Source: Styela clava (Eukaryota). From it: DNA of 64,000 nucleotides. The stretch is from the NCBI RefSeq assembly GCF_964204865.1, contig NC_135262.1, positions 9,920,001-9,984,000 of the forward strand, written 5' to 3'. Every line of letters starts with the position of its first letter. Within the stretch, counting starts at the first letter, position 1. A program made the translations under genes and the position numbers. The notes below the pieces were generated by a model. It did not search any database and had not been told where the DNA came from. It saw nothing but the letters and a program-made list of their open reading frames with translations. Positions 1,089 through 48,926 of this stretch are shown in pieces.

Positions 1089-3362
1089 TCAACAAACTGG
1101 CTGTAGCTTCCTGAATAAAGTGTCCCAAGTAGAAGCGTGGCGATGATTCAGGTCATCGTCGATATGAACCGGATCTTTTTTTCTGAAATCCTGACCCCAT
1201 CTGAGATTTTCGTCACCTCTGATTTTTCCCGTAAAACAGTTTGCAGCGATATTATTTCCACCTTTTTGTTTGTAAAAAATTGCAATTATAAAGGCATGCT
1301 CCTAACATATGTAGCAACAGGAAACAATTTTTTTAATGATTACTCCAAACAAGACTGTGCTAAAACAATCAGATACAATTGCTTTTGCAAATGAAATAGT
1401 TTTGTAACTTTAAAATTCTTTTTGCATTTGTTAGGCATATAAAAAATATTTATACAGACGCGCAGCTAGGATTTTTAAAAGGGGGGGGGGGTTATATATG
1501 TTATATTTTAACGTTTCCTGTGCTATTTTTGTTTTGAATCATCAAATGCAAACGGTAGACTAACTGTAATCAAAAAGAAAAGAATATATAGTTATAAAGA
1601 TTCATCAATTGCTTATGTCAATTAGGTAGTGAGTGTGAAAGAAACAATATGAATTTTACCTGCAAGGCATTCACTGTTGCACCAGCCTTTCGATGTCTGC
1701 AGATTCATGTCAATCGCATGCCCTACTTTGTGATTTGATTTCACGGCTGGTGTAACAATGGCTCCTGGAACTACCGCGTTATCTTTTCTGTATGAGTCTG
1801 TCACCCAAACCTGTGGGGGATATGTAAAAACAGTCACAAAATTTGAAAATGAGCTTGTTATAAAGTCTTTATTCGAGTAAATCGTTAAAAAAGCACGGCA
1901 ATAATGTTGTAGTGTGAGAGCGGTATTAACCTATTATGTTCCTTACAATTACTTTACAATCTTCTGCATATCCATCGATCCTATTCATTGCGTTTTTGAA
2001 TCCTGGTTCAATCCGAACAGCTTTGTTGTTGTATCCTCTCACATTACTGGTGGTGTATGTTTCCAGAGTGCAGAAACCAGAAGTAGTTCCTGTCATATGT
2101 AAAAGAAGTCGTCTTAAGTAGGCTAACATTTTCCACCTCAACATCTACAGACGTCGTGTGAATGGAATTTATATATATATATATATATATAAATATTGCC
2201 AAATGAAAATATAATCGGTATTTTATTCAACATTAATGAAATTACTGACAGATTTGTTTGTTTTTGGCGCACGTACACTTCGGGATAGCAACCATTTCCT
2301 CGTCTCGCCCAGGAACTTCAAATAGGGAAAATGAGGACGTGACAAATGCCTCTTAAAAAATTACAAACTATACCTCCTGATGGTACACAACATTTTCTGC
2401 TCGACGACCCTCCGCACATACTACTTTTCCATTGTCCTGAGCAATAGTTGCTGTCATGCTTGCACTGTCCATTTTGGGCGCCGCATTTGCTATCTCGATA
2501 TTTGACATAATAATTTTCCGTGCTTTTACCTTGTACAGACAAATTTCATGAGAACAATACAATGGCTGATTTAATTCGTATGTCTGACACTCTAAATTGA
2601 CCTGAATCTAAAAATCTTCCTCATCCATACGAAAATGACAAATATCAAAATAGAAATAGGTTGCTGATTTCGAGTTTAAAATCGCTCATAACAAAAGTTG
2701 ACCACCGTTAGAATTTTAACATCGGTTCTATTGATTGTCAAACAGTTGTTTTAATAAACGTTCTATGACCCTAATTTCTTAAAATTGTATCTTAAATATA
2801 GCTCAAGCACACATTTCCTTATAATACAAATATAAAATATTTTGTGAAGCAACGATAAAATCACTTACAAGTGGAAGAGCAAGGTTTACAGCAACGTATG
2901 AATAAATTCCCGCTGCACTTTCCACGTTCATACCCTGCTATGCAATTATGGGTTCGGTAATCGTGACATGTTCCGCCTATTCTGGTACAAGCAGAAGCTG
3001 AAATAAATAAAACGAAGTTATGTGAGTGTGTTACATTTTCTAACATCGCTTAAGTCAGGAGGGCTATATCGAAGTGAATTAAATTTGACAGAGAATATGG
3101 AGAAGATTTTGAAAAATTTCGACAAAAATTTATCCAGAGAAAGTTCGATTGTTAATCCTCTCGCGTAGATAATGCCAATACGCTAAATAGCATGCAAATG
3201 GGTAGGTCGCAAAATCGTATCTTTATGTAATGTATGCATGTAATTGGAGGCAAAACAGCCGACAAAATTGGTAGAATTATGATAACTAAACAGATTCAAC
3301 TTACTTTGTCCTCCTATGACGAAACACCCAAGAACAACACACGCAAATATTAGAAGCTTCAT
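1089..3362 (-). CDS. Secreted protein: signal peptide + 2 beta-defensin-like Cys modules + peptidase M15 (LAS, L-Ala-D-Glu peptidase-like) domain, ~269 aa, 6 exons
   Basis: GT-AG exons 3362-3305, 2997-2869, 2529-2374, 2089-1947, 1810-1660 and 1261-1089 join in frame (810 nt). Signal peptide MKLLIFACVVLGCFVIGG; motifs TDSYR, SNHKVGHAID (SxHxxGxAxD), LRWGQDF and DPVH. Confidence 0.88.
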
Positions 3363-3459: not shown

Positions 3460-6400
3460 ATACATTCTTTATTATGGCACAATGAGTTTCGCTTTGCCAT
3501 TGAAGCGGTTTCTTATGTAGGAAATCGTGCTCTATTGTTATGTTTTTACGATATTTTAAAAATGGCCCGTGTATAAATATCTTTTTTATTGCGTTGCGTC
3601 GGTAGGCCAAATTTAAAAAATGGTAATTGGAGTGAGACCACGCGGATGATTTGCATAGGCGTATGAAATAGATTAAAACAAGGTCAGGAAAGCATGTCTG
3701 CTGTCTCACAATGGGTTGCGAAGTATTAAGGAAATTGATTCAGTGTTCTAAACTCGGATTCCACATATTGTTTTCAACGTAACCTCGAAAGCAAGAATTT
3801 ATAATAATGGTGCTAGGAAACCAAGACTCATGCGATAAGGAAAAAACAGTCATTAAGAGTCGTTTAGTCAACCAGACATGAATGCTTCATCCCATTGTTT
3901 TCCAACGTTTGTGTGCCTCTAAGTGAGAGTCAACACAAAGGCAATTCATGAACTTCGATACAATATCACTTAATTAAAGAAATCTTTTCTTATAGTAGTT
4001 GTATACACTTTCATATAAAATTTGTAAAAACTGGAATTGGGATAACCACAGAGAAAACAATAATTTGTTTGCTTGGTAAAGATAGTATAATTAGCCATGT
4101 GACCCTATGATTAATTACCCTCATTTTTCGTTAAATCTTTATATTTGTAGATATGAACAAAATCTTGAAACTTTTGTCACAATCACGGCAAACTCAAATT
4201 GCACAGATTTTTGTGATATGCATTTATGGGTGAAGCCCTTAATTATCCAAAAAATAAATAGAACATGGCCTCGAACACTCACATTAACATCTCATAAACA
4301 TTTTACCCCTGGAAACCTTTGTTGACTTCCCTGAAACAAAGCGGTGTCTCTAATTTTCATAAATCAGCAGTGTTTACGCGGGCTTCGCTAACTATCTATT
4401 GAGCATATTTGAAACTACTTAAACATAATTTAGTATATAACTCGAGCTGGGAAATATCAAAAATGAATTGCAAAAATCCTAGTTTGTGAGAAAGATTTAA
4501 TTTCGGTGACTTTCGACTTCTGAACTTCTCGTTAATTGGCCAATCACAATTACCGACATTGTTGATGTTGCCGAGCTACGCAAATTGGACCTTTGGCGAC
4601 CTCTTTAAAACTCATAAATCACAATTGACGATATTTCCGACAAAGTTGGCATTGCTGGCTTGTGCAAAGTAGACACATGCAATTCAAATATACTAAAAGT
4701 GCGGTTGCTAACTTATTTGTAGGGTTTCTCCGTTTTTCTTATTCATATGGGTTGATTCAGGTACGCATAACTGGCGATGCCGCTTTTTTGAATCACCGAA
4801 TAAAATAATTTTTCTGATTAAAGCGGTACGATGGTCGACGGATGACGTGGCACAAAAGTCAGCACCATATTATATAATCAAAAGAGTGACACATATATAT
4901 TTGGTAAATGTTATATAAATTCAAAAGACAGAAAACAATTTACATGAGAGAAATGAACCAGAGTTCTTCAATGCCGAGGTTGAGTTATTACGCATAAAAC
5001 GTTAACAAAATAAATAAATATTATTCAAAAAGGCTACACCTCATTGTTGTTGCTGTTCTGAACTGAGTCACACTTTTGCGAATGGTGCTTGACTTGTCAT
5101 ATATGCCACGCACCTTCAGAATATTATTGTTATTTCAAATGCAGAAGTTTCTCCAGCATTGTTTGACATTCTATAGCCAGCGGATAAGACCAACCGTTGA
5201 CGTTTTCTGTCACTTTGCTTCCATCTGACGTTACAACATTGCATCTTGGATCTTTTTAGATTTTGCACCCTCTCGTGATTTGCTGCGTATTTGTTTGTTT
5301 TTCCTTGTATTGCTTCTTTATTATGTTGTAACGGAAAATCGAAATGAACTTACTAAAATTATTCTGAGAAGGCTGAATCAAATATATAAATGTGGTTGTC
5401 AATGTCCGCGCGGTCAAATCGTCATTGATGCGCAAAGTTATGGGTCATTGATGGGTGCAAAAGCGCTGCCACCGTACTTTGCAGTCGTTAGTATGAATGG
5501 GATGTGAGTTATAGATGCAATGTAAGAATTCTTTTGTAGTAGCGTTTGATTCAAGATTTATTCAAAATTTTAATATATGCGTTAAGATAAAAAATGCGAC
5601 ATCAAATCTTTTTCGCATTAGAAGGTTCATTGAACTGGTATACATGGTAATTGAATGTGACTGGCAATAGCAGCACAATGGAAACGAACGGCAGGATGGT
5701 TTTCTACGAAACTCTAGTTAGCGTTTATCAAGATTTAAGCTAAATAGATTTAATACAATGGTATTCTGCGAAACAGAGACTCATATTGTCTGCTTTCGAA
5801 CGGTAACCGCAATCGAGCGAGGCCCTACGTGTTTCTAGTCGCAGTTGAAATAGAATACAGAAAATGGGACATGATATACCAATACATTCGAGATTAGACA
5901 TATAAACGACGGAAACTCAAAAGTTGGGAATGCTTTGTACTTTGTACATACTTTGTTGAATTTAACAGAATGCCCCATTGTGTATTCGAATGTGCCCCAC
6001 AAGTGGGGTACAGTGAGACACTTGACAAACGTTTTTAAAAGCATTTTGGTGGTGAGGTGTTCGTCGCGATGGAATTTCTTAGTCGCTAAATAATACCCCT
6101 CTCGGCATTAGCCCCGTAAAGTGAAATGAATGTGCAGAATATAGGGTTCAAAATATGCAAAATAAAAAAGTGTTCCAACCTTCCTCCTACAATATTTGCT
6201 CCAGGAAACCATAAAACTTGTATATATACACTATTACGGGCAGGGCAGAGAAGGATGAATAACATTATGAAAGAATATGGCTTCAAGTACTGAATTAAAG
6301 TTTTTTAAACTATCAGCATGGATGATCATAAATCCCTTTTTTGTTGGTTGGTTCTGCATACTTTGGTGCAGTCAATTTGAATACATTTTTCTTTCCTTCC

Positions 6401-39420: not shown

Positions 39421-40847
39421 CTAAAACGGACAGATAACACTGTAACTATGAAACTATGAAAACGAAGCCTGCTTGAACATCTGTCTGAGCGGCTGCAAAA
39501 ACACAGGTCATGCTGCACACTAACACAAATATATTTTTGTAACGTTTGTCTGACCAAGGTCAGACTTCTTCATAGTTCAACCTAATCGATAGCACATGTT
39601 TGGCGCCAATATAGCAACCCTGGTCTAGACACGCAATATTCCACACTTTATTTTAAAACCTTGGCAGCGAAAAAACTTGCATTTGTTACTTGATAATATG
39701 CTTTATCGGGCTTGCCCAGACTCAAATACTGTATGTGTACCAGTATATTGTATTTTGCGCATGTGAAGTACTGTATTCTCCTTGTTGCTGAACACACAAC
39801 TGGTTCGAGACAATTTTTGGGGGTATTTCAATAAAATATACATCAGACGCAATCGACTGCTCGAGACGTGGCGATCGACGTGTTTGCCACCCCCGGTGAA
39901 TTGCACGCAATCTGAATATAAAGCGAGGCTAAATAATGCACCCACTGTCTATATTCATCTTTATTTTTTTTCAGATATACTGAGATTTGTTTTTTTTCAT
40001 TCGGTAGATAAACACATTCATTAGATTTTAACTTATATACATGTTTGTTCACAATCCAGATTCCTCACCCTTCTATATGCTGTTTTATTTTTGCGAATGA
40101 ATCAAACTAAAATCTATCTAATTATATAGAAATCAATGACGCGTGACTGTTGGGAATAATTAAGTACTTCACATGCCGGTGGGCTGTCTATGATGTATAT
40201 TCGTCGTGTACTCCCAAACATCAGCTTACCCATCTCTTGCACCTATTTTATAGCCACCAACTGAAGGTCGTATAAAACATCACTGGGCAACTCAAGTATT
40301 GAATCTTCAGATAAGTGAATATTTACAACGGAGTTAATGGGGATATGATCATTGCTATTAAGCACAATATATATGCATATAATAGGCTTATACTAGTATT
40401 TTATTTATATTTAATTATGTTATTTTGATTTGATTTTAGCAATGCCAACAAAAATATAACTTTATTGTTAAAATAAAATGAAATCAATCTTATAGATATA
40501 GTTTATGGAATAGCTTGACAATCTTGATAAATATGAATCCTTCCCGTCTACTTTGCAGTGACCATCCATGCACGACGAAAAAATTGTTTGCCTGTTATCT
40601 CGTCCGTGAGTGTCAGGGAACGCGAGCCTATGTTGAACTTAAATACACTGAGTTTCTTTCTTGAAAAAAAAAGATACCACTCTCAACGATATGATTATGC
40701 ACTTTTATATAAATTTGATAAAAACATGTTTCCTGATATTATATTGGAAACGTGTGGCAAGGTGGTGTAAATTTAGTTCAGCGGTAATTATATACAATTT
40801 GTTACCGATTAATTCTTGACACGACACTCAAGCCTAAGCTCGAGTTT

Positions 40848-43800
40848 CTATTTCCAATTTTTATTCGAAGCACCTTGACATTGTCTGAAGTTGAAACAAT
40901 CAATGCCGGGGTCATAGCTATCATTTACGGAGTTTGATTTTAAAAAGTGTTGTAGATGATGTAAACTAAAGTGTTGATATGAGGAAAGAATTTTCAATAA
41001 ATAGACAGACACCAACCGCTTGCCATTCAACTAAATTCTCCCAGACCTTTCGAGAATTCTACTTAATTAATGATCAAATTTACAATTATGATACTTACGG
41101 CTGAGTGGTTATTCCGACAAGAAACAGTTCACCATTGACAACAAGTGATTTCACGAATTTTCCTTCTATAAAAGGCCATTCACTTGCAATTTCCAGACAG
41201 CTCCATGTTTCATTCGGTATATCGAACATTTGAATTCCAATATCATCTGCATTAATAATCTCAATTTAGATATTTGTAAGATAGAATATAAATATCTTCA
41301 TAGCCGTTCACGAATGTTCGGCAAACAATTGGGAATATATTTGATGAAAATCGAGATTTATAGTAAACGTGATGCATTTTATGTGATGCATTTTAGTTTA
41401 TATTACCTGAAACATATATAAAGTCGTCCAATTTAACGGCACTTCCAAGACACGTTTTAGACAACAAGTGTTTGATTTTCTGCCAAGTGTTAGATTTGCG
41501 ATCATATTTCAAGGACAAATTCAAGATATTTCCTGCGGTATCTTGACCTCCAAGACAATAGATCCCGCCTGAAAAACCACCAAACTTCAAGACATGCTGA
41601 GTTATTACCCTGTCTCATTCTATACGGAAAAACTGGATTATAAGACCAAATTAATACGCATTTTACTATACCTTTTTCAGGCACTAAAATCACAGAAGTC
41701 CTTGCAAACTCTAAATCTTGAATATATGTCCATGTCTTTTTCCTGGAATCAAACATTTCTGCAACGTACGTAGTAACAGGGAAATTTCCTCCACAGACAT
41801 AGATACAATCTAATTAAAATTTAAAATCATATTCACGGAAAGGAAAGTTGTCGAAATTAATTAGATTAATTGGCGATAATTAATTAATTAGAGACCAATT
41901 AGAGATAATTTATAAACGAGATAATTGAGTCAATTTTACTGTGATGGAGATAAAATTACATTACAAATATGGGAGCGCCAACCATTCAATGCCGCAGCAG
42001 GCGGACAGAATCCGTGGTCCTTCAACATATCAGCCATTCTTTCCAAGGTAGAAGATGAATCAGTATATTTCAGACGATAAGTTGATTTTGTACATCCTGC
42101 TAACATGTAAACGTATCCATTCAAGGAAACAATTGAAAACCATTTGCAGTTTAAATCTCTCAGTGATATCTGAAAATAACAAGATATGTAAAATTAAAAT
42201 TAAGAAGATAGAAAACATGACGTTTATTATTATATATAGAGTTATAGACAGTAAGATATATAAACCTGGATTTCCTTCCACTGTTTAGTTTCTGGATTGT
42301 AGAGGTGAAAATGCTCGGAGTATTCGTCATATATCAACATAACCTCATCTAATCAATAATATAAAATATAATATACCAGTAGATAAGCAGAGCATATATC
42401 AGATAGATCACCAGTAGATAAGCAGGTTAATTTGTTTCTTTCTATAATTTTTTTAAAATTTCAAATTATTCGAAAATGTTTAGTGATATTTTCTACATTT
42501 AAAGAATTCCGTGTCACGGGTGCCATCAAATATGGACTTTTTAAATGTTCGCTTATCCTTGGAAAACTAATTGTTTATTTAAATACAACTTTTCATGTTA
42601 TTAATTCCTTCTATAAAGTAAAATATAAAATACAATGAAAAATACCTTGCGAGGAAAAAACTACAGAATACTGGAATAACGCATGACCTTTGAGTTCATC
42701 TGCACTTGGACGTTGGTATGGTTCAAATTTCAACATTCGACTGAGCATGTTTGTGGCCTTCTTCACGTGATTTATTAAGAGCCCCTCTAGGTTTAGATTT
42801 TTATTCATTTTTATGTTATAATTCCACAAATCAGGTTCTGCACCGAATGGATGCAGTCCATTACTCCATAGAAAATACATGACAAGACCAAGAGAGAATA
42901 TATCGGCTTGTTGAGATATAATATCATGTAGATATGTTTCAGGTGCCCTGAATCCATCGGTTCCAACACGTGCAATACTTTGAGCTGTTACAGAGCAACC
43001 ATGTCGTAATTCTTTGCTCAAACCAAAATCTGTGATTTTCACGTGTAACTTATCGTGAGTGAGTAAAATATTACTAGGCTTGAGATCTCGATGAATCACG
43101 CTCTTTGAGTGTATAAACGCTAAACCATTTATTAGTTCTTTTGCCATTGAAATACGTAAAGATGCTTCGAATGATTTCCTTGATAGTTTATGTTCTTTAA
43201 CCCAACTTTCAAGATTCTGTGCGTGACATAGTTCCATTGCAATGTACATACGTTTACTAAACGGTCCTTCATTATAGACGTCTGAGTGAATAATAGACAC
43301 GACATTTGGATGATGCGCCAGCTTAAGTAGTATTTTTGCCTCTTTGATATTCTGGCTGTTATATGGGAGGAATTTGATAACAATCGGCCTCGAACCTGTG
43401 ACTATACTTTTTTGTTCGCCTCGATAAATATGTGCTCTTTCGCATATTGGATCGCTTTTGTATACACGTAAAGAATCGGATAAATCCGCAAAATCTGTAA
43501 AAAAAATTTCAAATTAAACTAATTCAAGCAAATAAAATTCAATATTGGCAAAACTTTTTCGCGATATTTTTTTTTTATTAAATCGCGATAGTTGGCTGAG
43601 TACTATATAAATTGAGGGATATCCCATTTTATACTTATATAGTATTTACCTTTTTCCGCATTTGATTCTTTTTCTTCAAGTTCTGTATCTGAAATTAAAA
43701 ATCACAAAAATTTGTGAAGTCAAGTTTTAAGCGGTTGAAAGTCAGGCTCTTCACAACCCTAAAGTGTGAGCCACTATTCACCCAGTTTCCAGAAATTATT

Positions 43801-44624
43801 TAATTGAAGCTCTGAAATGACTGATAAGGTAATTCAAAAAAGTTTCGAATACCTTTTTCATTACTTTTGTAAAACTTTTATACTAATAAAATTCTCTGCA
43901 GATTTTGCTCTATATAGTCATTTTCAAAACTTACCGTATTTGGTAATGTACGTTTTGTTGATTATCCGAGTTCCGAAATGGGCTCCTTTTAAATCTGCTC
44001 CTGCAAAGTCTGACGAAAAGACAAAATTAGAAAGCAATCTAAATTTGAATGACAATGGATTTAGAGAGCATGATATGGCGTAAGTGTAATTAATAAATGA
44101 ATAAACAAACAGCCCCAATATCAAGAATATCTTTTTGCGTAAACTTAGAGGACTTAGTTGACCCAGATATCAATTTAAACGAAACGTTTTGACTGAGCCG
44201 AAAGACATAATTGTATATCCACGAAACCCATCGAAGAAACTCACTCTAATAACGTGGAATAACGCAGGTATAGCAACTGTAAAAATGGAGACAAGACTTA
44301 CCCTGTTTTTGCAAGTTGTAATTTTTTGCTCCAATCGAAGCCCCAGAAAGATTACTTCCGTCGATGTCAACTGAAATTAAAATGCGACAATTATACAAAA
44401 ATATTCATGATGTTCTTACTTGGTGTACCATGCCATTGACTATTTTGAATTTATATTATATGTTTCTGAAACCTTCTAGAAATAAATATATCATAGCTTA
44501 AAAATTAAAACGTTTGCGAATCATCGATTAACATAATCCTATAAACAATAAACTGAAAACAAATTATTGTTTGTTTAATCAACGCAGTATTATGCTAATT
44601 ATCCTCACCAGGCTGTGTATTCAT
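40848..44624 (-). CDS. IRE1-like Ser/Thr kinase fused to C-terminal Kelch repeats, with two short N-terminal pseudo-repeats, ~627 aa, 11 exons
   Basis: Phase-compatible exons 44624-44609, 44370-44302, 44009-43935, 43688-43650, 43494-42646, 42348-42266, 42169-41983, 41809-41672, 41568-41407, 41246-41099, 40965-40848 (first and last least certain). Kinase motifs IVIK, HPNVV, AMELC, IHRDLKPSN, DFG, GTDGFRAPE, HPFG; Kelch motifs IYVCGG..FDSRKKTW and IYCLGG..YDRKSNTW. Confidence 0.82.
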
Positions 44625-45543
44625 CAGGCTAAAGGCAATTCATTTCATTGTTATAAAATTCAATCAAATCACAACAAAGTGAACTGAGACACCTTCGTAA
44701 GTAGCCTAACCCTGAACGTCAAACCTAAACCATTTATGTAAAATGGTTTAAATGTAAAATCTGTGGTGAAATTAATTCGTATGTAGTTCTTGTCAACGTG
44801 GTCATAAAAGCATAAGTTGCCAAAAATTAATTTCAGGTTTCAAACAATAGGCAGAGTAAATGAAAATTGGCACATATTCCAATGTATGCAAATTAACGAT
44901 TTGCTGGAGGAAGTTGAATAATATATTCAAATTAAAAGACAATTTTGTGACTCATATGCCGTTATGTTGGGTAATGCAGTTACACACTTGCTTTCGAGAA
45001 TAAAAAATCACGACATGTTTGATTTTTATATTATGTATACAATAAATTTTCTATATATATTGAGTATTTGCTCTTTTCTAACACTGGATTATTTTTCAAG
45101 CCGTCACAACTATTTGTAAAGATACCCGGATTCAATTGGAAGTCTTGATTTCATGATACAAAAAATGTTATACGTTTTTACCAACTTTAAATATCAATGT
45201 AAAACACAACTGCCAAATTCTATGAAAACATTCTGATGATAAACTACACGTAAGTTGAAACAACATGTCAATAACTTTGCTTACAAACATTGTTTGGCTG
45301 GGTTGTCGCCGTTTCACCATCCTGACTTTCACTTCTTAAAAGGATTCGTTGTGATTCAATGTTGTCCAATATTTCCTTGTGAGCAATAGCTACTTTTAAT
45401 ATAATATATAACTGATTACCAACACGTTGACGTTAGTTACCAAAGATTGTAATATCCTAAATTATACGTGTTGCGAAATTACTTTTTTCTTTAGAACCTT
45501 GATAATATGCATGGTATTTAATATGAACAAAGTAGCAAAACAA

Positions 45544-45870: not shown

Positions 45871-46495
45871 AAAATAGTGGCAACATTCAACTTTAAATGA
45901 CGCAATGTTTCATTGTTTATTTCCGTAAGGAGTGACACAAATATAAGATGAAAAAAATTATATTAAGAAGAAAGTTACCCCCTGGTTGTTCCTCCATTTA
46001 TTAGCTGGTAGTCCAAATGCAGTTAATTTCCACTTTGTAGTATTTTATATCTAGTTTTTCTATATTAAATATAATTACTGATTTTGAATTACTAATGTTA
46101 GATAATAAAGCACTAATTCCTCTGTTCTGATAACAACTCTTATCTTCAAATTGACTTTCCAATTGCTTACTACAATGCGAGTATGTAAAGTCAATAGAGA
46201 TCTGGTAACTAGCACCACATTAGACTAGCCTATTGGCTTTATTCTTAACAATTACACATATTTGTGTCATACTTAGACTAACCAGCTTACAAAGTGGAAT
46301 CAAGGAACATTGCATGTACAGGAAGTATTAAATAAAGAGCACAGTATGAGTCAATAGCTTAACAAAGCAGTAGCATGGTCCATATGTGGCCTAATCATGA
46401 GAAAAGCAAATAATAATTCCGAAACTTAGTATAGAACAATAACATATTACTCACATAAAGCTTGGGTCGAGTAAGCATATATTTCAAGTATATTG

Positions 46496-46972: not shown

Positions 46973-48029
46973 TATATTTCAAGTATATTGGGAATAAGGA
47001 ATGAATATTGGGAAAAATGAAACAACAAACAAGAACATAATTAGGGCAGTTTAAAATAGAAAAGTGCCACCATTTTCTCGGTTTTTGAAAATGCTAACGC
47101 GTTCAGATCCGAGTAAATAAATACCGTCTTACTAGTCCTAGTCCTATCCTAAAATTATTAGCATTGCTCAATGAATCCTATATGAAACTATGAAATTATA
47201 CTCAGATTAATTTATTTGTATATATTTATTGTGTGAATGTATACTTATATTGTACAAATTAATAACGCGTCCTTGCAAATTGATTTGGGACTGTTCTTTG
47301 CCAAATTGGCCGATTACTGAGAAAACATTTTGCGATTTCGTTTAATACCAAAAAAAATATGAGCTGATGTTATTTTGCGCGAATAAAAAATTGCGGGATC
47401 GTATTACTGCAAACAAGGTACGTTTACGCGTTTTCTGAGAAAACAAAATTCACATTTCCGCGAAAGACCATTCTTGCAAAAGCATGTTTTTGTAAAACTA
47501 CATTCTCACAATCGTATGTTCTCGCAGATGGTGGCCCAGAATAGATGTTTGAGCAACAGCCACAAAACATTAAAACAAAAATTGAAAAATTGCTGCTTGC
47601 AAAAGATCGAAACATAATGCAACTGCATTAGCTAAATATAAAATAGTAAGCATGTTCCAACATGATGTACGAATGATAGGCCACGACATATGTAAAAAGT
47701 AGCTATTCATGTAATTTTCATCGGCGACCAAAACGCTTTCGAAATAGATACTGGATCTTAGAACTAACTTATTGATGTTATTCCAAGGATCGTGTTAGAA
47801 ATCAAAAATCAAGACGATTATTCATATAATGATCTGTGAATCATTTTTGATTCGAATTTGAGAGTTGTACAACCCAAACGTCGACGCATCTCACGCATCG
47901 CCTCGGTATAAATAGAAAGATTGCGAATGAAAGAAAACAGTATGAGTAAGAGGATTTGTCTCGGGTTTCGACGTGGAGCGAGTAGTCAAGTTGTATTTCT
48001 CGCATTTGGTAAAAATATATTTCGAAGAT

Positions 48030-48926
48030 ATGAATTGTTCTTCGAACGTCACTGCTGCACAAACTGATTTACTGCCATGGGATTTTTATGTGGATGCGTC
48101 GATTTCTTCTATTTTATTTTACATTACATTGTGTCAAATATATATATTAATCAAAAAAAGACTTTGGAAAATCCATGCAGAATCTATCAAAGACATCTTG
48201 TCACCAACAAATCTACGGTCAATTATGAGCATATGCATTGTTGTATCAGGATTTCTTTCTTTGATTAAAATGTTCAGTCAGTTAGCATTGTATTTCGACC
48301 CAGCTCATCCTGTACACTATAGCATTTCAGTTTCTTTAACAGGATTTAGTTTTATGTTTGTGTATCTTACATTATGGTTTCGTCAATCTATGTTTCATAC
48401 TGTGATCTCTTTAAAGCATCTTTCGTCAAATCCTTTAAAAATATTTAGTTATATTCAATTTTACGTTATTGTAGTTTTTAGTTTTATCTTATTTGGTATT
48501 TTTATAGCACATCAAATTATGAGCCGAGGATATTTTAGATTACCATGTTTTCCAACTTGGTATTTATTTTTAATAATATTTTATCAAGTTGAAACTCAAA
48601 TTTCAACTTTGATTCTTTTTTTGATTCCTCTCCTACGACACAGAAATAACACAAGAACAATTTCGGCATCACAAGAACCATCCGTAGTTTTCATGCGTTT
48701 ATTAAAAAGATCATTCATAATCACACCCATAACGATTGTGACTGATATTATTGCACTAGTAGTTTTATATTTTGGAGATCACTCGCTTATTTATAGCCTG
48801 AATCTGGTAATTAATTTATGTTGCGTGATATTTTGTTTCGCTGACTGGAAAGAACGGTTTCTACCTTGTTTCAATTCTTTTAAAGATTGTTGTGAACCTT
48901 ACTGCTTAAAAGACAATATACCATAA
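48030..48926 (+). CDS. Intronless 7TM GPCR-like receptor, paralog of 31857-32783, ~298 aa from ATG 48030
   Basis: MNCSSNVT N-terminus with sequons; WDFYVD, YITLCQIY, YLTLWFRQSMFH, QVETQISTLILFLIPLLRHR, INLCCVIFCFADWKER. Confidence 0.85.
   Translation: MNCSSNVTAAQTDLLPWDFYVDASISSILFYITLCQIYILIKKRLWKIHAESIKDILSPTNLRSIMSICIVVSGFLSLIKMFSQLALYFDPAHPVHYSISVSLTGFSFMFVYLTLWFRQSMFHTVISLKHLSSNPLKIFSYIQFYVIVVFSFILFGIFIAHQIMSRGYFRLPCFPTWYLFLIIFYQVETQISTLILFLIPLLRHRNNTRTISASQEPSVVFMRLLKRSFIITPITIVTDIIALVVLYFGDHSLIYSLNLVINLCCVIFCFADWKERFLPCFNSFKDCCEPYCLKDNIP

What the first reader, a model, noticed from the sequence alone, without database searches (positions are those of the whole stretch)
43935..44624. 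Two RHIM/cRHIM-like (beta-solenoid) pseudo-repeats at the N-terminus of a kinase-Kelch protein
Seen: two symmetric phase-1 mini-exons (69 and 75 nt) encode VDIDGSNLSGASIGAKNYNLQKQ and DFAGADLKGAHFGTRIINKTYITKY, which align as D-(I/F)-x-G-x-(N/D)-L-x-G-A-x-(I/F)-G. Established: the RIPK1 RHIM core is IQIGAYNY and the Imd cRHIM core is LHFG; such motifs nucleate functional amyloids in innate immune and cell-death signalling. Inference: a RIPK-analogous amyloid-assembled kinase signalling protein. A pentapeptide-repeat-like reading (SNLSGA/ADLKGA) is the alternative.
Basis: inference. Interest (0 to 1): 0.8.

Follow-up and report, generated by a model that had tools for sequence, protein, structure and literature searches.

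The report
Repeat motif mini-exons on sea-squirt kinase
Two tiny, genuinely spliced exons of a sea-squirt kinase gene encode two copies of a glycine-rich motif that sits where sister genes carry a death domain and that also appears in an NLR-type gene, so it is probably a docking or clustering module, but it does not meet the sequence definition of a RHIM.

Summary
In Styela clava gene LOC120332687 (minus strand), exons 44370..44302 (69 nt) and 44009..43935 (75 nt) are phase 1-1. RNA-derived contigs from two studies splice them in series into an IRE1-type kinase exon followed by Kelch repeats.

The two peptides are real pseudo-repeats (11 of 5000 shuffles reach their score). They belong to a family motif, phi-x-G-G-[DN]-phi-x-x-[AP]-x-phi-G-x-x-x-phi-N, with a strong period-5 hydrophobic pattern.

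RHIM membership fails: the tetrad is met in 0 of 10 instances, Pfam RHIM gives no hit, and the kinase is IRE1-like, not RIPK-like. Pfam Pentapeptide also fails, although the weak best matches among solved structures are QnrB1.

The context supports a homotypic docking or clustering module:
- The closest paralogs carry a Death domain in the same slot.
- The motif exons are cassette exons in two paralogs.
- The motif recurs in small kinase-less proteins.
- A 69-nt phase 1-1 motif exon lies between Death-like and NACHT exons of an NLR-type gene; this hit is weak and its splicing is not shown.

Amyloid formation is untested. The scan had already noted RHIM-like motifs on other DNA of this genome.

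The parts
45979..45997 (-). First coding exon stub: ATG at 45997, 19 coding nt (MEEQPG + 1 base), donor |gtaac; phase 1
   Evidence: First residues of stored P0151 located programmatically; loose ends of contigs beyond 45393/45395 match it
45285..45392 (-). Leader exon, 108 nt (VAIAHKEILDN...TTQPNNV), NAGNAG acceptor giving isoform X2 (lacks V7); phase 1-1
   Evidence: tblastn of P0151, 100%; joint 44370|45285 in 4 of 4 runs; isoform difference; splice context
44610..44624 (-).
   Evidence: Zero depth in bins 44443-45218 in 4 of 4 runs; absent from RefSeq isoforms P0151-P0153
44302..44370 (-). Motif mini-exon a, 69 nt, phase 1-1: (F)DIDGSNLSGASIGAKNYNLQKQ
   Evidence: family profile hit 3.3e-5 genome-wide (circular) and E 0.07 leave-out
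43935..44009 (-). Motif mini-exon b, 75 nt, phase 1-1: (D)FAGADLKGAHFGTRIINKTYITKY
   Evidence: profile hit 6.9e-5 (circular) and E 0.16 leave-out; paralog copies in L029 and L032 at 50% identity
43650..43688 (-). Acidic linker exon, 39 nt, phase 1-1 (DTELEEKESNAEK); variable between individuals and assemblies, alternative acceptor (isoform X3)
   Evidence: X1 variant; 3 of 13 residues differ between assemblies
42646..43494 (-). Kinase exon, 849 nt, phase 1-1; IRE1/RNase L-type Ser/Thr kinase with Lys144, HRD Asp240 and DFG 259-261 conserved in the family
   Evidence: Pfam Pkinase 1.2e-40 on P0151; closest solved kinases IRE1; conserved columns; exon ends from contigs
40551..42352 (-). Six exons encoding the C-terminal Kelch beta-propeller (residues ~387-662)
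   Evidence: tblastn of P0151; Pfam Kelch_6 3e-16 and Kelch_1 7e-15

Best explanation
The two mini-exons encode two tandem copies (types a and b) of a lineage-specific motif of about 23 residues, rich in Gly and Asn, with a hydrophobic residue every fifth position: phi-x-phi-x-G-[GS]-[DN]-phi-x-x-[AP]-x-phi-G-x-x-x-phi-N. It acts as a modular N-terminal protein-protein docking or clustering module of a large Styela clava expansion of IRE1/RNase L-type kinases. Inferred mechanism: motif copies on different molecules pair or stack as short beta-rungs. Partners would be other family kinases, small tandem-motif proteins such as LOC120338966, and probably an NLR-type Death-motif-NACHT protein. Stacking brings kinase domains together for trans-autophosphorylation, as oligomerisation does for IRE1, RNase L and RIPKs. 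The Kelch propeller binds a ligand or substrate. Copy number is tunable because each copy is a symmetric phase-1 cassette exon. Shown: exons, splicing, expression, repeat, family conservation, period 5, slot swap with a Death domain, cassette behaviour in two paralogs, occurrence outside kinases. Inferred: that it mediates homotypic assembly, and all downstream steps. It works like a RHIM or Death-domain adaptor module but is not a RHIM by sequence.
For: Real, expressed, spliced exons. Significant internal repeat and leave-out profile ranking. Genome-wide, all 15 profile hits with E<0.1 lie 1-9 kb upstream, on the same strand, of family kinase exons. The tandem a+b arrangement is shared by the genes of P0012, P0014 and P0156, at 47-57% kinase identity. 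The motif region has 0 of 48 differences between two S. clava assemblies, against 3 of 13 in the adjacent linker and 8 of 283 in the kinase. Slot swap: the closest paralog group has a Death domain there (PF00531, 22.9 bits against a 22.6 cut-off), and the Death-like exon is present upstream in 5 of the 7 closest paralog loci held. Cassette behaviour: P0012/P0163 and P0156/P0005 differ by exact 23-residue deletions of one motif copy. The motif occurs outside kinases: P0171, 192 aa with no kinase, and three motif-like segments at C16:16.386 Mb. An NLR-type gene at C13:22.057 Mb has a 69-nt phase 1-1 exon (ttttttcag|...|gtgagt) with a motif hit (21.8 bits, genome-wide E 0.11, not in the training set). 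It lies between a Death-like exon (44% identical over 64 aa to P0002's) and NACHT exons (PF05729, 34 bits against 26.7), and all neighbouring phases are 1. Family C-termini are shuffled (of 50 scanned: Kelch 5, Deltex-C 3, fn3 2, SH3 2, Macro 1, Med25-like 1, Ribonuc_2-5A 1), as in immune-type modular families. Kajava et al. 2014 (passages) describe the same logic for amphioxus RHIMs: they sit at positions usually held by death-fold domains.
Against: There is no direct evidence of any interaction or assembly. The NLR hit is weak (E 0.11), single (no paralog copies), and its inclusion in a transcript is not shown. The genome searches scored only 21 first-look candidates, so both presence and absence elsewhere are weakly bounded. 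Cross-species conservation is only suggestive: with a profile from S. clava loci only, P0059 (another organism, at most 42% identical to any S. clava kinase) scores E 0.02 in a 193-protein set, and P0018 is not significant. The segment is 21% charged, and aligned in register it puts K over R, which does not favour a dry in-register stack. In this gene no exon skipping was seen (3 RefSeq isoforms and the contigs include both copies). No Pfam, hhalign or PDB-sequence relationship to any assembly-forming motif reaches significance.
Confidence: 0.5

Rival explanations
1. One reading: the repeats are divergent true RHIM/cRHIM motifs that nucleate a functional amyloid, making this a RIPK-analogous amyloid-assembled kinase.
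For: ex2 shares G-x-x-I-G-A-x-N-Y with the RIPK1 core as quoted in the finding and in PMC4262963 (GIQIGA). N at G+3 occurs in 3 of 10 family instances. The two tandem copies recall two-rung HET-s-type solenoids and tandem RHIMs (PMC4262963 passages). The slot is shared with a Death domain. A possible NLR partner exists. ASM families need not share sequence homology (PMC8086366, abstract in listing).
Against: Tetrad met in 0 of 10, VxxG in 0 of 10. The G-phi-Q-phi-G signature said to be shared by RHIM, PP and BASS3 (bioRxiv 10.1101/2020.01.06.895854, passages) is absent from both repeats. Pfam RHIM gives no hit. No RIPK or HET-s chain among PDB sequences at E<=10. The kinase is IRE1-type. The same genome holds better RHIM-like candidates with full tetrads (NIQLGHNN, FVQLGSNN in L035 and L036), and these score no more than 4.2 bits with the kinase-motif profile, so this is a different class. 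The period-5 pattern is not what an alternating beta-strand core predicts (my inference). Charge content is 21%.
Confidence: 0.12
2. The 48 residues fold within one molecule as a small pentapeptide-repeat-type right-handed beta-helix (about two coils, nine five-residue units). This would be a folded binding surface for a partner protein or nucleic acid, without polymerisation.
For: Lag-5 hydrophobic autocorrelation is 0.53 for P0151 residues 41-91, with all other lags at or below zero. The mean of 12 family proteins is 0.29, reached by 0 of 2000 shuffles. Units such as SNLSG, ADLKG and AHFGT fit A-[DN]-[LF]-x-x (that consensus is recalled, not from a call). 3 of the 4 weak PDB-sequence hits of the motif profile are the pentapeptide-repeat protein QnrB1, each through several repeated stretches (E 1.1-1.6).
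Against: Pfam Pentapeptide gives no hit on 10 full-length proteins at E<=10 and none at these exons in the genome scan, which does find genuine pentapeptide exons elsewhere. hhalign against a genuine Styela pentapeptide exon gives probability 0.24%. The QnrB1 hits are not significant. Single-copy family members (for example P0048, about five units) and isoforms that drop one copy could hardly form a stable helix alone (inference). Conserved K/R falls at a position that would point inward in the fourth unit (inference).
Confidence: 0.2
3. The motif is a linear docking or regulatory segment (for example a pseudosubstrate, a degron, or a site bound by the protein's own Kelch propeller or by another enzyme) and has no self-assembly role.
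For: It lies in a low-complexity N-terminal region next to a variable acidic linker. Kelch propellers commonly bind short peptides (general knowledge). No assembly evidence exists.
Against: About 23 conserved positions with two invariant or near-invariant glycines and period-5 hydrophobics is long for a linear motif. The motif occurs with many different C-terminal domains (Macro, Med25-like, none), so it is not tied to Kelch. It occurs in tandem in kinase-less small proteins. It swaps with a Death domain.
Confidence: 0.15

Closest known systems
RHIM (RIP homotypic interaction motif; Pfam PF12721) and insect cRHIM
   Same: A short (about 20-25 residue) Gly/Asn-containing beta-prone segment outside globular domains, attached to a kinase. 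It can occur in tandem and occupies slots otherwise held by death-fold domains (PMC4262963 passages).
   Different: Lacks the (V/I)-Q-(V/I/L/C)-G tetrad, the G-phi-Q-phi-G signature and VxxG (definitions). No Pfam RHIM score. N-terminal to an IRE1-type kinase rather than C-terminal to a RIP kinase. Conserved period-5 pattern.
Pentapeptide repeats (Pfam PF00805; e.g. QnrB1, PDB 2xtw/2xtx/2xty)
   Same: Hydrophobic residue every fifth position, with D/N before it and small residues two before it, in the first two or three units of each copy. QnrB1 is the best, though non-significant, PDB-sequence match.
   Different: Only about 4-5 units per copy and 9 in all, with a 2-residue break. Below every curated threshold. 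hhalign finds no relation. Invariant glycines and a K-x-phi-N tail are not pentapeptide features.
NLR-associated amyloid signalling motifs (HET-s/HRAM, PP, sigma, bacterial BASS)
   Same: A short motif with no homology requirement that is shared between the N-terminal part of an NLR-type protein and effector proteins. Two pseudo-repeats per protein, as in HET-s.
   Different: The genes are not adjacent (C13 against C17). The NLR instance is a single weak hit. The effector domain is a kinase. No prion or amyloid test has been done.
Death-domain adaptor modules on kinases (RIPK1, IRAK-type logic)
   Same: The same N-terminal slot in the closest paralogs holds a Death domain. That Death-like module is also shared with the NLR-type gene.
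   Different: The motif is about 23 residues of beta-type sequence, not a six-helix bundle.
IRE1 / RNase L kinases
   Same: The kinase domain is closest to IRE1 (1.1e-26). One of 50 relatives keeps a Ribonuc_2-5A (KEN) domain. These kinases are activated by oligomerisation (general knowledge).
   Different: No lumenal or ankyrin sensor and no KEN nuclease here; Kelch propeller instead.

Membership tests
RHIM | Core tetrad (V/I)-Q-(V/I/L/C)-G (PMC13506858, passages) | tested here: not met
   ASIG meets 2 of 4 and AHFG 1 of 4. The full tetrad is met in 0 of 10 aligned family instances (definition).
RHIM | Central G-phi-Q-phi-G signature shared by RHIM, PP and BASS3 (bioRxiv 10.1101/2020.01.06.895854, passages) | tested here: not met
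   GASIG and GAHFG have no Q and a small residue at the first phi position.
RHIM | Score at or above the cut-off of Pfam PF12721 (20 bits) | tested here: not met
   No hit at E<=10 on the mini-exon peptides or on 10 full-length relatives. The genome-wide six-frame scan gives a best of 16.6 bits elsewhere and none at these exons.
RHIM | Forms amyloid and mediates homotypic interaction | not testable with these tools
   Needs ThT, EM or cell assays.
cRHIM | VxxG core (PMC13506858, passages) | tested here: not met
0 of 10 instances.
Pentapeptide repeat (PF00805) | Score at or above the Pfam cut-off (20.2 bits) | tested here: not met
   No hit at E<=10. The genome scan finds 13 hits elsewhere and none at these exons.
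Pentapeptide repeat (PF00805) | Five-residue periodicity with a central hydrophobic residue | tested here: met
   Lag-5 autocorrelation 0.53. Family mean 0.29, reached by 0 of 2000 shuffles.
Pentapeptide repeat (PF00805) | Profile or sequence relation to bona fide members | tested here: inconclusive
   hhalign against a genuine Styela pentapeptide exon gives probability 0.24%. However, 3 of the 4 weak PDB hits are QnrB1 at E 1.1-1.6.
NLR-associated amyloid signalling motif (functional class) | The same short motif on an NLR-type protein and on effector proteins | tested here: inconclusive
   One NLR-type gene (C13:22.057 Mb) has a 69-nt phase 1-1 motif exon, at 21.8 bits and genome-wide E 0.11, between Death-like and NACHT exons. 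Its inclusion in a transcript is not shown.
NLR-associated amyloid signalling motif (functional class) | NLR and effector encoded by adjacent genes | tested here: not met
   The NLR-type gene is on C13 and this kinase on C17. No NACHT-like ORF was seen in the part of the window examined (36-50 kb). The rest of the window was not scanned for NACHT.
IRE1/RNase L-type kinase | Kinase domain closest to IRE1, with catalytic residues present | tested here: met
   The top 16 PDB rows are IRE1. K144, D240 and DFG are conserved.
IRE1/RNase L-type kinase | C-terminal KEN (Ribonuc_2-5A) nuclease | tested here: not met
   Kelch repeats instead. KEN is present in 1 of 50 relatives.

The most novel reading that the evidence does not exclude
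Tunicates are reported to lack RHIMs and RIPK1. Styela clava may have evolved its own beta-solenoid or amyloid-like signalling motif, carried on 69-nt phase-1 cassette exons. These exons would have been shuffled among NLR-type sensors (Death-motif-NACHT), small tandem-motif adaptors or regulators, and an expanded set of IRE1-type effector kinases. Sensor-templated stacking of the motif would cluster and activate the kinases, and alternative splicing would set the number of rungs. This would be a metazoan counterpart of fungal and bacterial NLR-associated amyloid signalling, with a kinase as effector.
Probability: 0.2. Interest if true: 0.85.

Novelty: new variant of a known kind. Interest (0 to 1): 0.58.

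Why it matters
Two papers state that tunicates lack RHIMs (PMC4262963, passages) and RIPK1 homologues (PMC12119088, passages). This locus shows what sits in the equivalent place in one tunicate. It is a large, modular family of IRE1-type kinases (121 kinase-exon matches). Their N-terminal adaptor slot holds either a Death domain or a short, exon-encoded, copy-number-variable motif that also occurs in small kinase-less proteins and probably in an NLR-type gene. If the motif mediates assembly, it would be a new class of short oligomerisation motif in animal innate-immune-type signalling. It would also be a clear example of exon shuffling of a 23-residue signalling module, and it is directly testable with peptides of about 50 residues. 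If it does not, the finding is still a correct annotation of an expressed, lineage-specific kinase family. My searches found no description of this family or motif: RHIM + tunicate, 84 papers, 15 listed; Styela clava + NACHT, 3 papers, none on this. This covers only the open-access library searched, and supplements were closed.

Tried and rejected
1. Window-internal paralogs of the mini-exons or the kinase: none.

2. Pfam on the mini-exon peptides alone: no hit, uninformative at 22-24 residues.

3. A phase-1 mini-exon enumerator on paralog flanks was noisy. It recovered the L024, L027 and L029 exons but missed others. I replaced it with profile searches.

4. P0171's C-terminal part: no Pfam hit, and only a non-significant PDB match (E 0.42). 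Left unexplained.

I could only show they are not S. clava.

6. Two literature searches were swamped by irrelevant papers.

7. I considered and rejected a left-handed hexapeptide helix (the period is 5, not 6) and a coiled coil or helical N-terminal extension (the composition is Gly/Asn-rich with no heptads).

8. I did not test whether known RHIM sequences lack lag-5 periodicity, because no tool gave me RHIM sequences. That contrast is inference.

9. Supplements of PMC4262963 and PMC12119088 (lists of invertebrate RHIM and RIPK proteins) were not opened and may hold tunicate entries.

Full report
WHAT IS THERE. The window is G000:C17:9920001-9984000 of Styela clava. The finding lies in LOC120332687 on the minus strand. 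I searched the window's exons one by one and did not join them. The full-length product was used only as the database's own protein, P0151 (XP_039255921.2, 662 aa). I found it with the kinase exon, and it maps back to the window at 100% identity.

Exons on the minus strand are: 45997..45979 (ATG stub), 45392..45285 (108 nt), 44370..44302 (69 nt), 44009..43935 (75 nt), 43688..43650 (39 nt), 43494..42646 (849 nt, kinase), and six Kelch exons down to 40551. Every junction at the 5' end is phase 1, so each internal exon is a symmetric module.

SPLICING AND EXPRESSION. I laid contigs of four runs from two studies on 42600-45500. The tool labels these runs 'RNA?' (a guess). They show GT..AG joints at 45285|44370 (4 of 4 runs), 44302|44009 (2 of 4), 43935|43688 and 43650|43494 (X2 and X4, with an allelic form in X1). 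Two contigs span all five exons.

THE REPEAT AND ITS FAMILY. The two peptides align over 15 residues with a BLOSUM62 score of 31, reached by 11 of 5000 shuffles. The kinase exon has 121 matches in the genome at E<=1e-10, and this is a lower bound. Relatives fetched from the 1.84-billion-protein library show similar short stretches ahead of the kinase.

Ten instances align with one invariant and one near-invariant Gly (A1). Eleven instances taken only from genomic references align without gaps (A4). The consensus is x-phi-x-G-G-[ND]-phi-x-x-[AP]-x-phi-G-x-x-x-phi-N. A profile lacking the window's two copies still ranks them first and second of 2,920 six-frame segments of the window (E 0.07 and 0.16).

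Genome-wide, all 15 A1 hits with E<0.1 lie upstream, on the same strand, of family kinase exons: 14 within about 4 kb and one at 8.5 kb. The tandem a+b arrangement recurs in the genes of P0012, P0014 and P0156. Between two S. clava assemblies the motif has 0 of 48 differences, the linker 3 of 13 and the kinase 8 of 283.

RHIM? Published definitions, from passages I read:
- 18-20 residues with the core tetrad (V/I)-Q-(V/I/L/C)-G, and cRHIM VxxG (PMC13506858).
- A G-phi-Q-phi-G signature shared by RHIM, PP and BASS3 (bioRxiv 10.1101/2020.01.06.895854).

The window's cores are ASIG (2 of 4) and AHFG (1 of 4). The full tetrad is met in 0 of 10 instances and VxxG in 0 of 10. N at G+3 occurs in 3 of 10. 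Pfam RHIM gives nothing on the peptides, nothing on 10 full-length relatives at E<=10, and nothing at these exons in a six-frame scan of the genome, where the best score is 16.6 bits elsewhere against a cut-off of 20. The motif profile finds no RIPK or HET-s chain among 177,635 PDB sequences at E<=10. The kinase is IRE1-like (1.1e-26; top 16 rows).

The two weak Pfam-RHIM hits elsewhere in the genome do carry full tetrads followed by NN. They score no more than 4.2 bits with the kinase-motif profile. So if Styela has RHIM-like motifs, they are a different class from this one. RHIM membership is therefore tested and not met.

PENTAPEPTIDE? The hydrophobic pattern has period 5. The lag-5 autocorrelation is 0.53 for residues 41-91, with every other lag at or below zero. 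The mean over 12 family proteins is 0.29, reached by 0 of 2000 shuffles. One protein (P0018) peaks at lag 6 instead. Three of the four weak PDB hits of the profile are QnrB1, a pentapeptide-repeat protein, but at E 1.1-1.6.

Against this reading, Pfam Pentapeptide does not reach the peptides or the proteins or these exons in the genome scan, which does find genuine pentapeptide exons at C2:23.48 Mb. hhalign against one of those exons gives probability 0.24%. So the motif looks pentapeptide-like in rhythm but is not a detectable member.

CONTEXT.
(i) Slot swap. The closest paralog group (54-57% kinase identity, C18 cluster; P0002) has a Death domain at the N-terminus (22.9 bits against 22.6). 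The Death-like exon is found upstream in 5 of the 7 closest paralog loci I hold; the other two have shorter flanks.
(ii) Cassette exons. P0012/P0163 and P0156/P0005 differ by exact 23-residue deletions of one motif copy. In this gene both copies are always included in what I saw.
(iii) Shuffled C-termini. Of 50 relatives scanned: Kelch 5, Deltex-C 3, fn3 2, SH3 2, Macro 1, Med25-like 1, Ribonuc_2-5A 1.
(iv) Outside kinases. LOC120338966 (P0171, 192 aa, no kinase) has motif copies. A locus at C16:16.386 Mb has three consecutive motif-like segments and no kinase.
(v) An NLR-type gene. The broader profile A4 gives a new hit at C13:22057524 (21.8 bits, genome-wide E 0.11). It is a 69-nt exon with ttttttcag| and |gtgagt signals, phase 1-1. 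Upstream are a Death-like exon (44% identical over 64 aa to P0002's, E 1e-11 in a one-locus database; Pfam Death only 14.3 bits) and a second 69-nt phase 1-1 exon. Downstream is a phase-1 exon carrying NACHT (PF05729, 34 bits against 26.7, with model positions 2-61 on the preceding open segment). The phases allow the motif exon to be included or skipped. I could not show inclusion. The exon has no paralog copies.

LIMITS. The genome profile searches scored only 21 first-look candidates. All named relatives are S. clava. Two motif-bearing relatives from unnamed assemblies are not S. clava (best identity 44% and 42%). With a non-circular profile, one of them scores E 0.02 in a 193-protein set and the other is not significant.

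READING. The best-supported explanation is a lineage-specific, exon-shuffled docking or clustering module that works like a Death domain or RHIM adaptor without being either (confidence 0.5). True RHIM amyloid gets 0.12, a monomeric mini beta-helix 0.2, and a linear regulatory segment 0.15.

LITERATURE. Kajava et al. 2014 say tunicates appear to lack RHIMs, and that amphioxus RHIMs occupy death-fold slots (passages). The eLife 2025 paper found no RIPK1 homologue in tunicates (passages). ASMs are said to lack clear sequence homology (PMC8086366, abstract in listing).

Earlier notes of this scan, unchecked, report RHIM-like motifs on a TIR adaptor, on LRR-ZU5-UPA proteins, on an NLR and on an intronless tandem-motif protein in this genome. 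I tested only the link to P0171-type proteins and to my own NLR hit. I could not locate the other noted loci.

Noticed in passing
G000:C13:22054500-22061500 (L045), + strand: 929-1114, 1230-1298, 3029-3097, 4504-5888: An NLR-type gene with a Death-like exon, two 69-nt phase 1-1 mini-exons (one carrying the kinase-family motif) and NACHT exons. The Death-like exon is 44% identical to that of the kinase paralogs.
   Followed up: partly
G000:C10:12572352-12572927 (L043 838-1431, P0171) and G000:C16:16382500-16391500 (L044 2125-3689); also C16:16.499 Mb: Small kinase-less proteins or loci with two to three tandem copies of the same motif class (LOC120338966, 192 aa, single exon, helical C-terminus with no Pfam hit).
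   Followed up: partly
L035 (G000:C14:4568899-4571931, minus strand about 1500-1533) and L036 (G000:C13:16295565-16298618, minus strand 1477-1527): Short open segments with a full RHIM tetrad followed by NN (NIQLGHNNTM; FVQLGSNNL), below Pfam's cut-off (16.6 and 15.5 bits). These are better RHIM candidates than the kinase motif, in a group said to lack RHIMs.
   Followed up: partly
Proteins P0013, P0015, P0022, P0024, P0035, P0039, P0006 (S. clava); L026, L027: Other kinases of the family carry a second, different kind of short N/Q/S/G-rich N-terminal motif (of the types ...VQN-x-N-V-Q-x-M-V-I-L-K-Q and N-phi-phi-x-G-x-S-N-phi-x-phi-x-Q), often with a Deltex-C C-terminus. P0035 has the unit twice, and an isoform is 51 residues shorter.
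   Followed up: no
G000, many contigs (C10:4.06-4.38 Mb, C5:2.65-4.43 Mb, C18:1.84-1.99 Mb, C6:22.27-22.52 Mb, C2:7.72-7.86 Mb): Massive tandem expansion of this IRE1-type kinase exon: 121 matches at E<=1e-10 (a lower bound). A few copies have in-frame stops.
   Followed up: partly
window 47973-48926 (+): A 317-aa open frame with several long hydrophobic stretches (it looks multi-pass membrane) and no Pfam hit at E<=10.
   Followed up: no
window 43650-43688 and 45389-45395: NAGNAG-type alternative acceptors give isoforms lacking V7 or DT91-92. Run X1 carries an allelic form of the 39-nt linker exon with 10 replaced letters, matching the older assembly's protein P0001.
   Followed up: partly
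L045 126-574 (+): Overlapping open frames with a tandemly repeated peptide unit (ISRSGGHGVYILDL...), probably a tandem DNA repeat upstream of the NLR-type gene.
   Followed up: no
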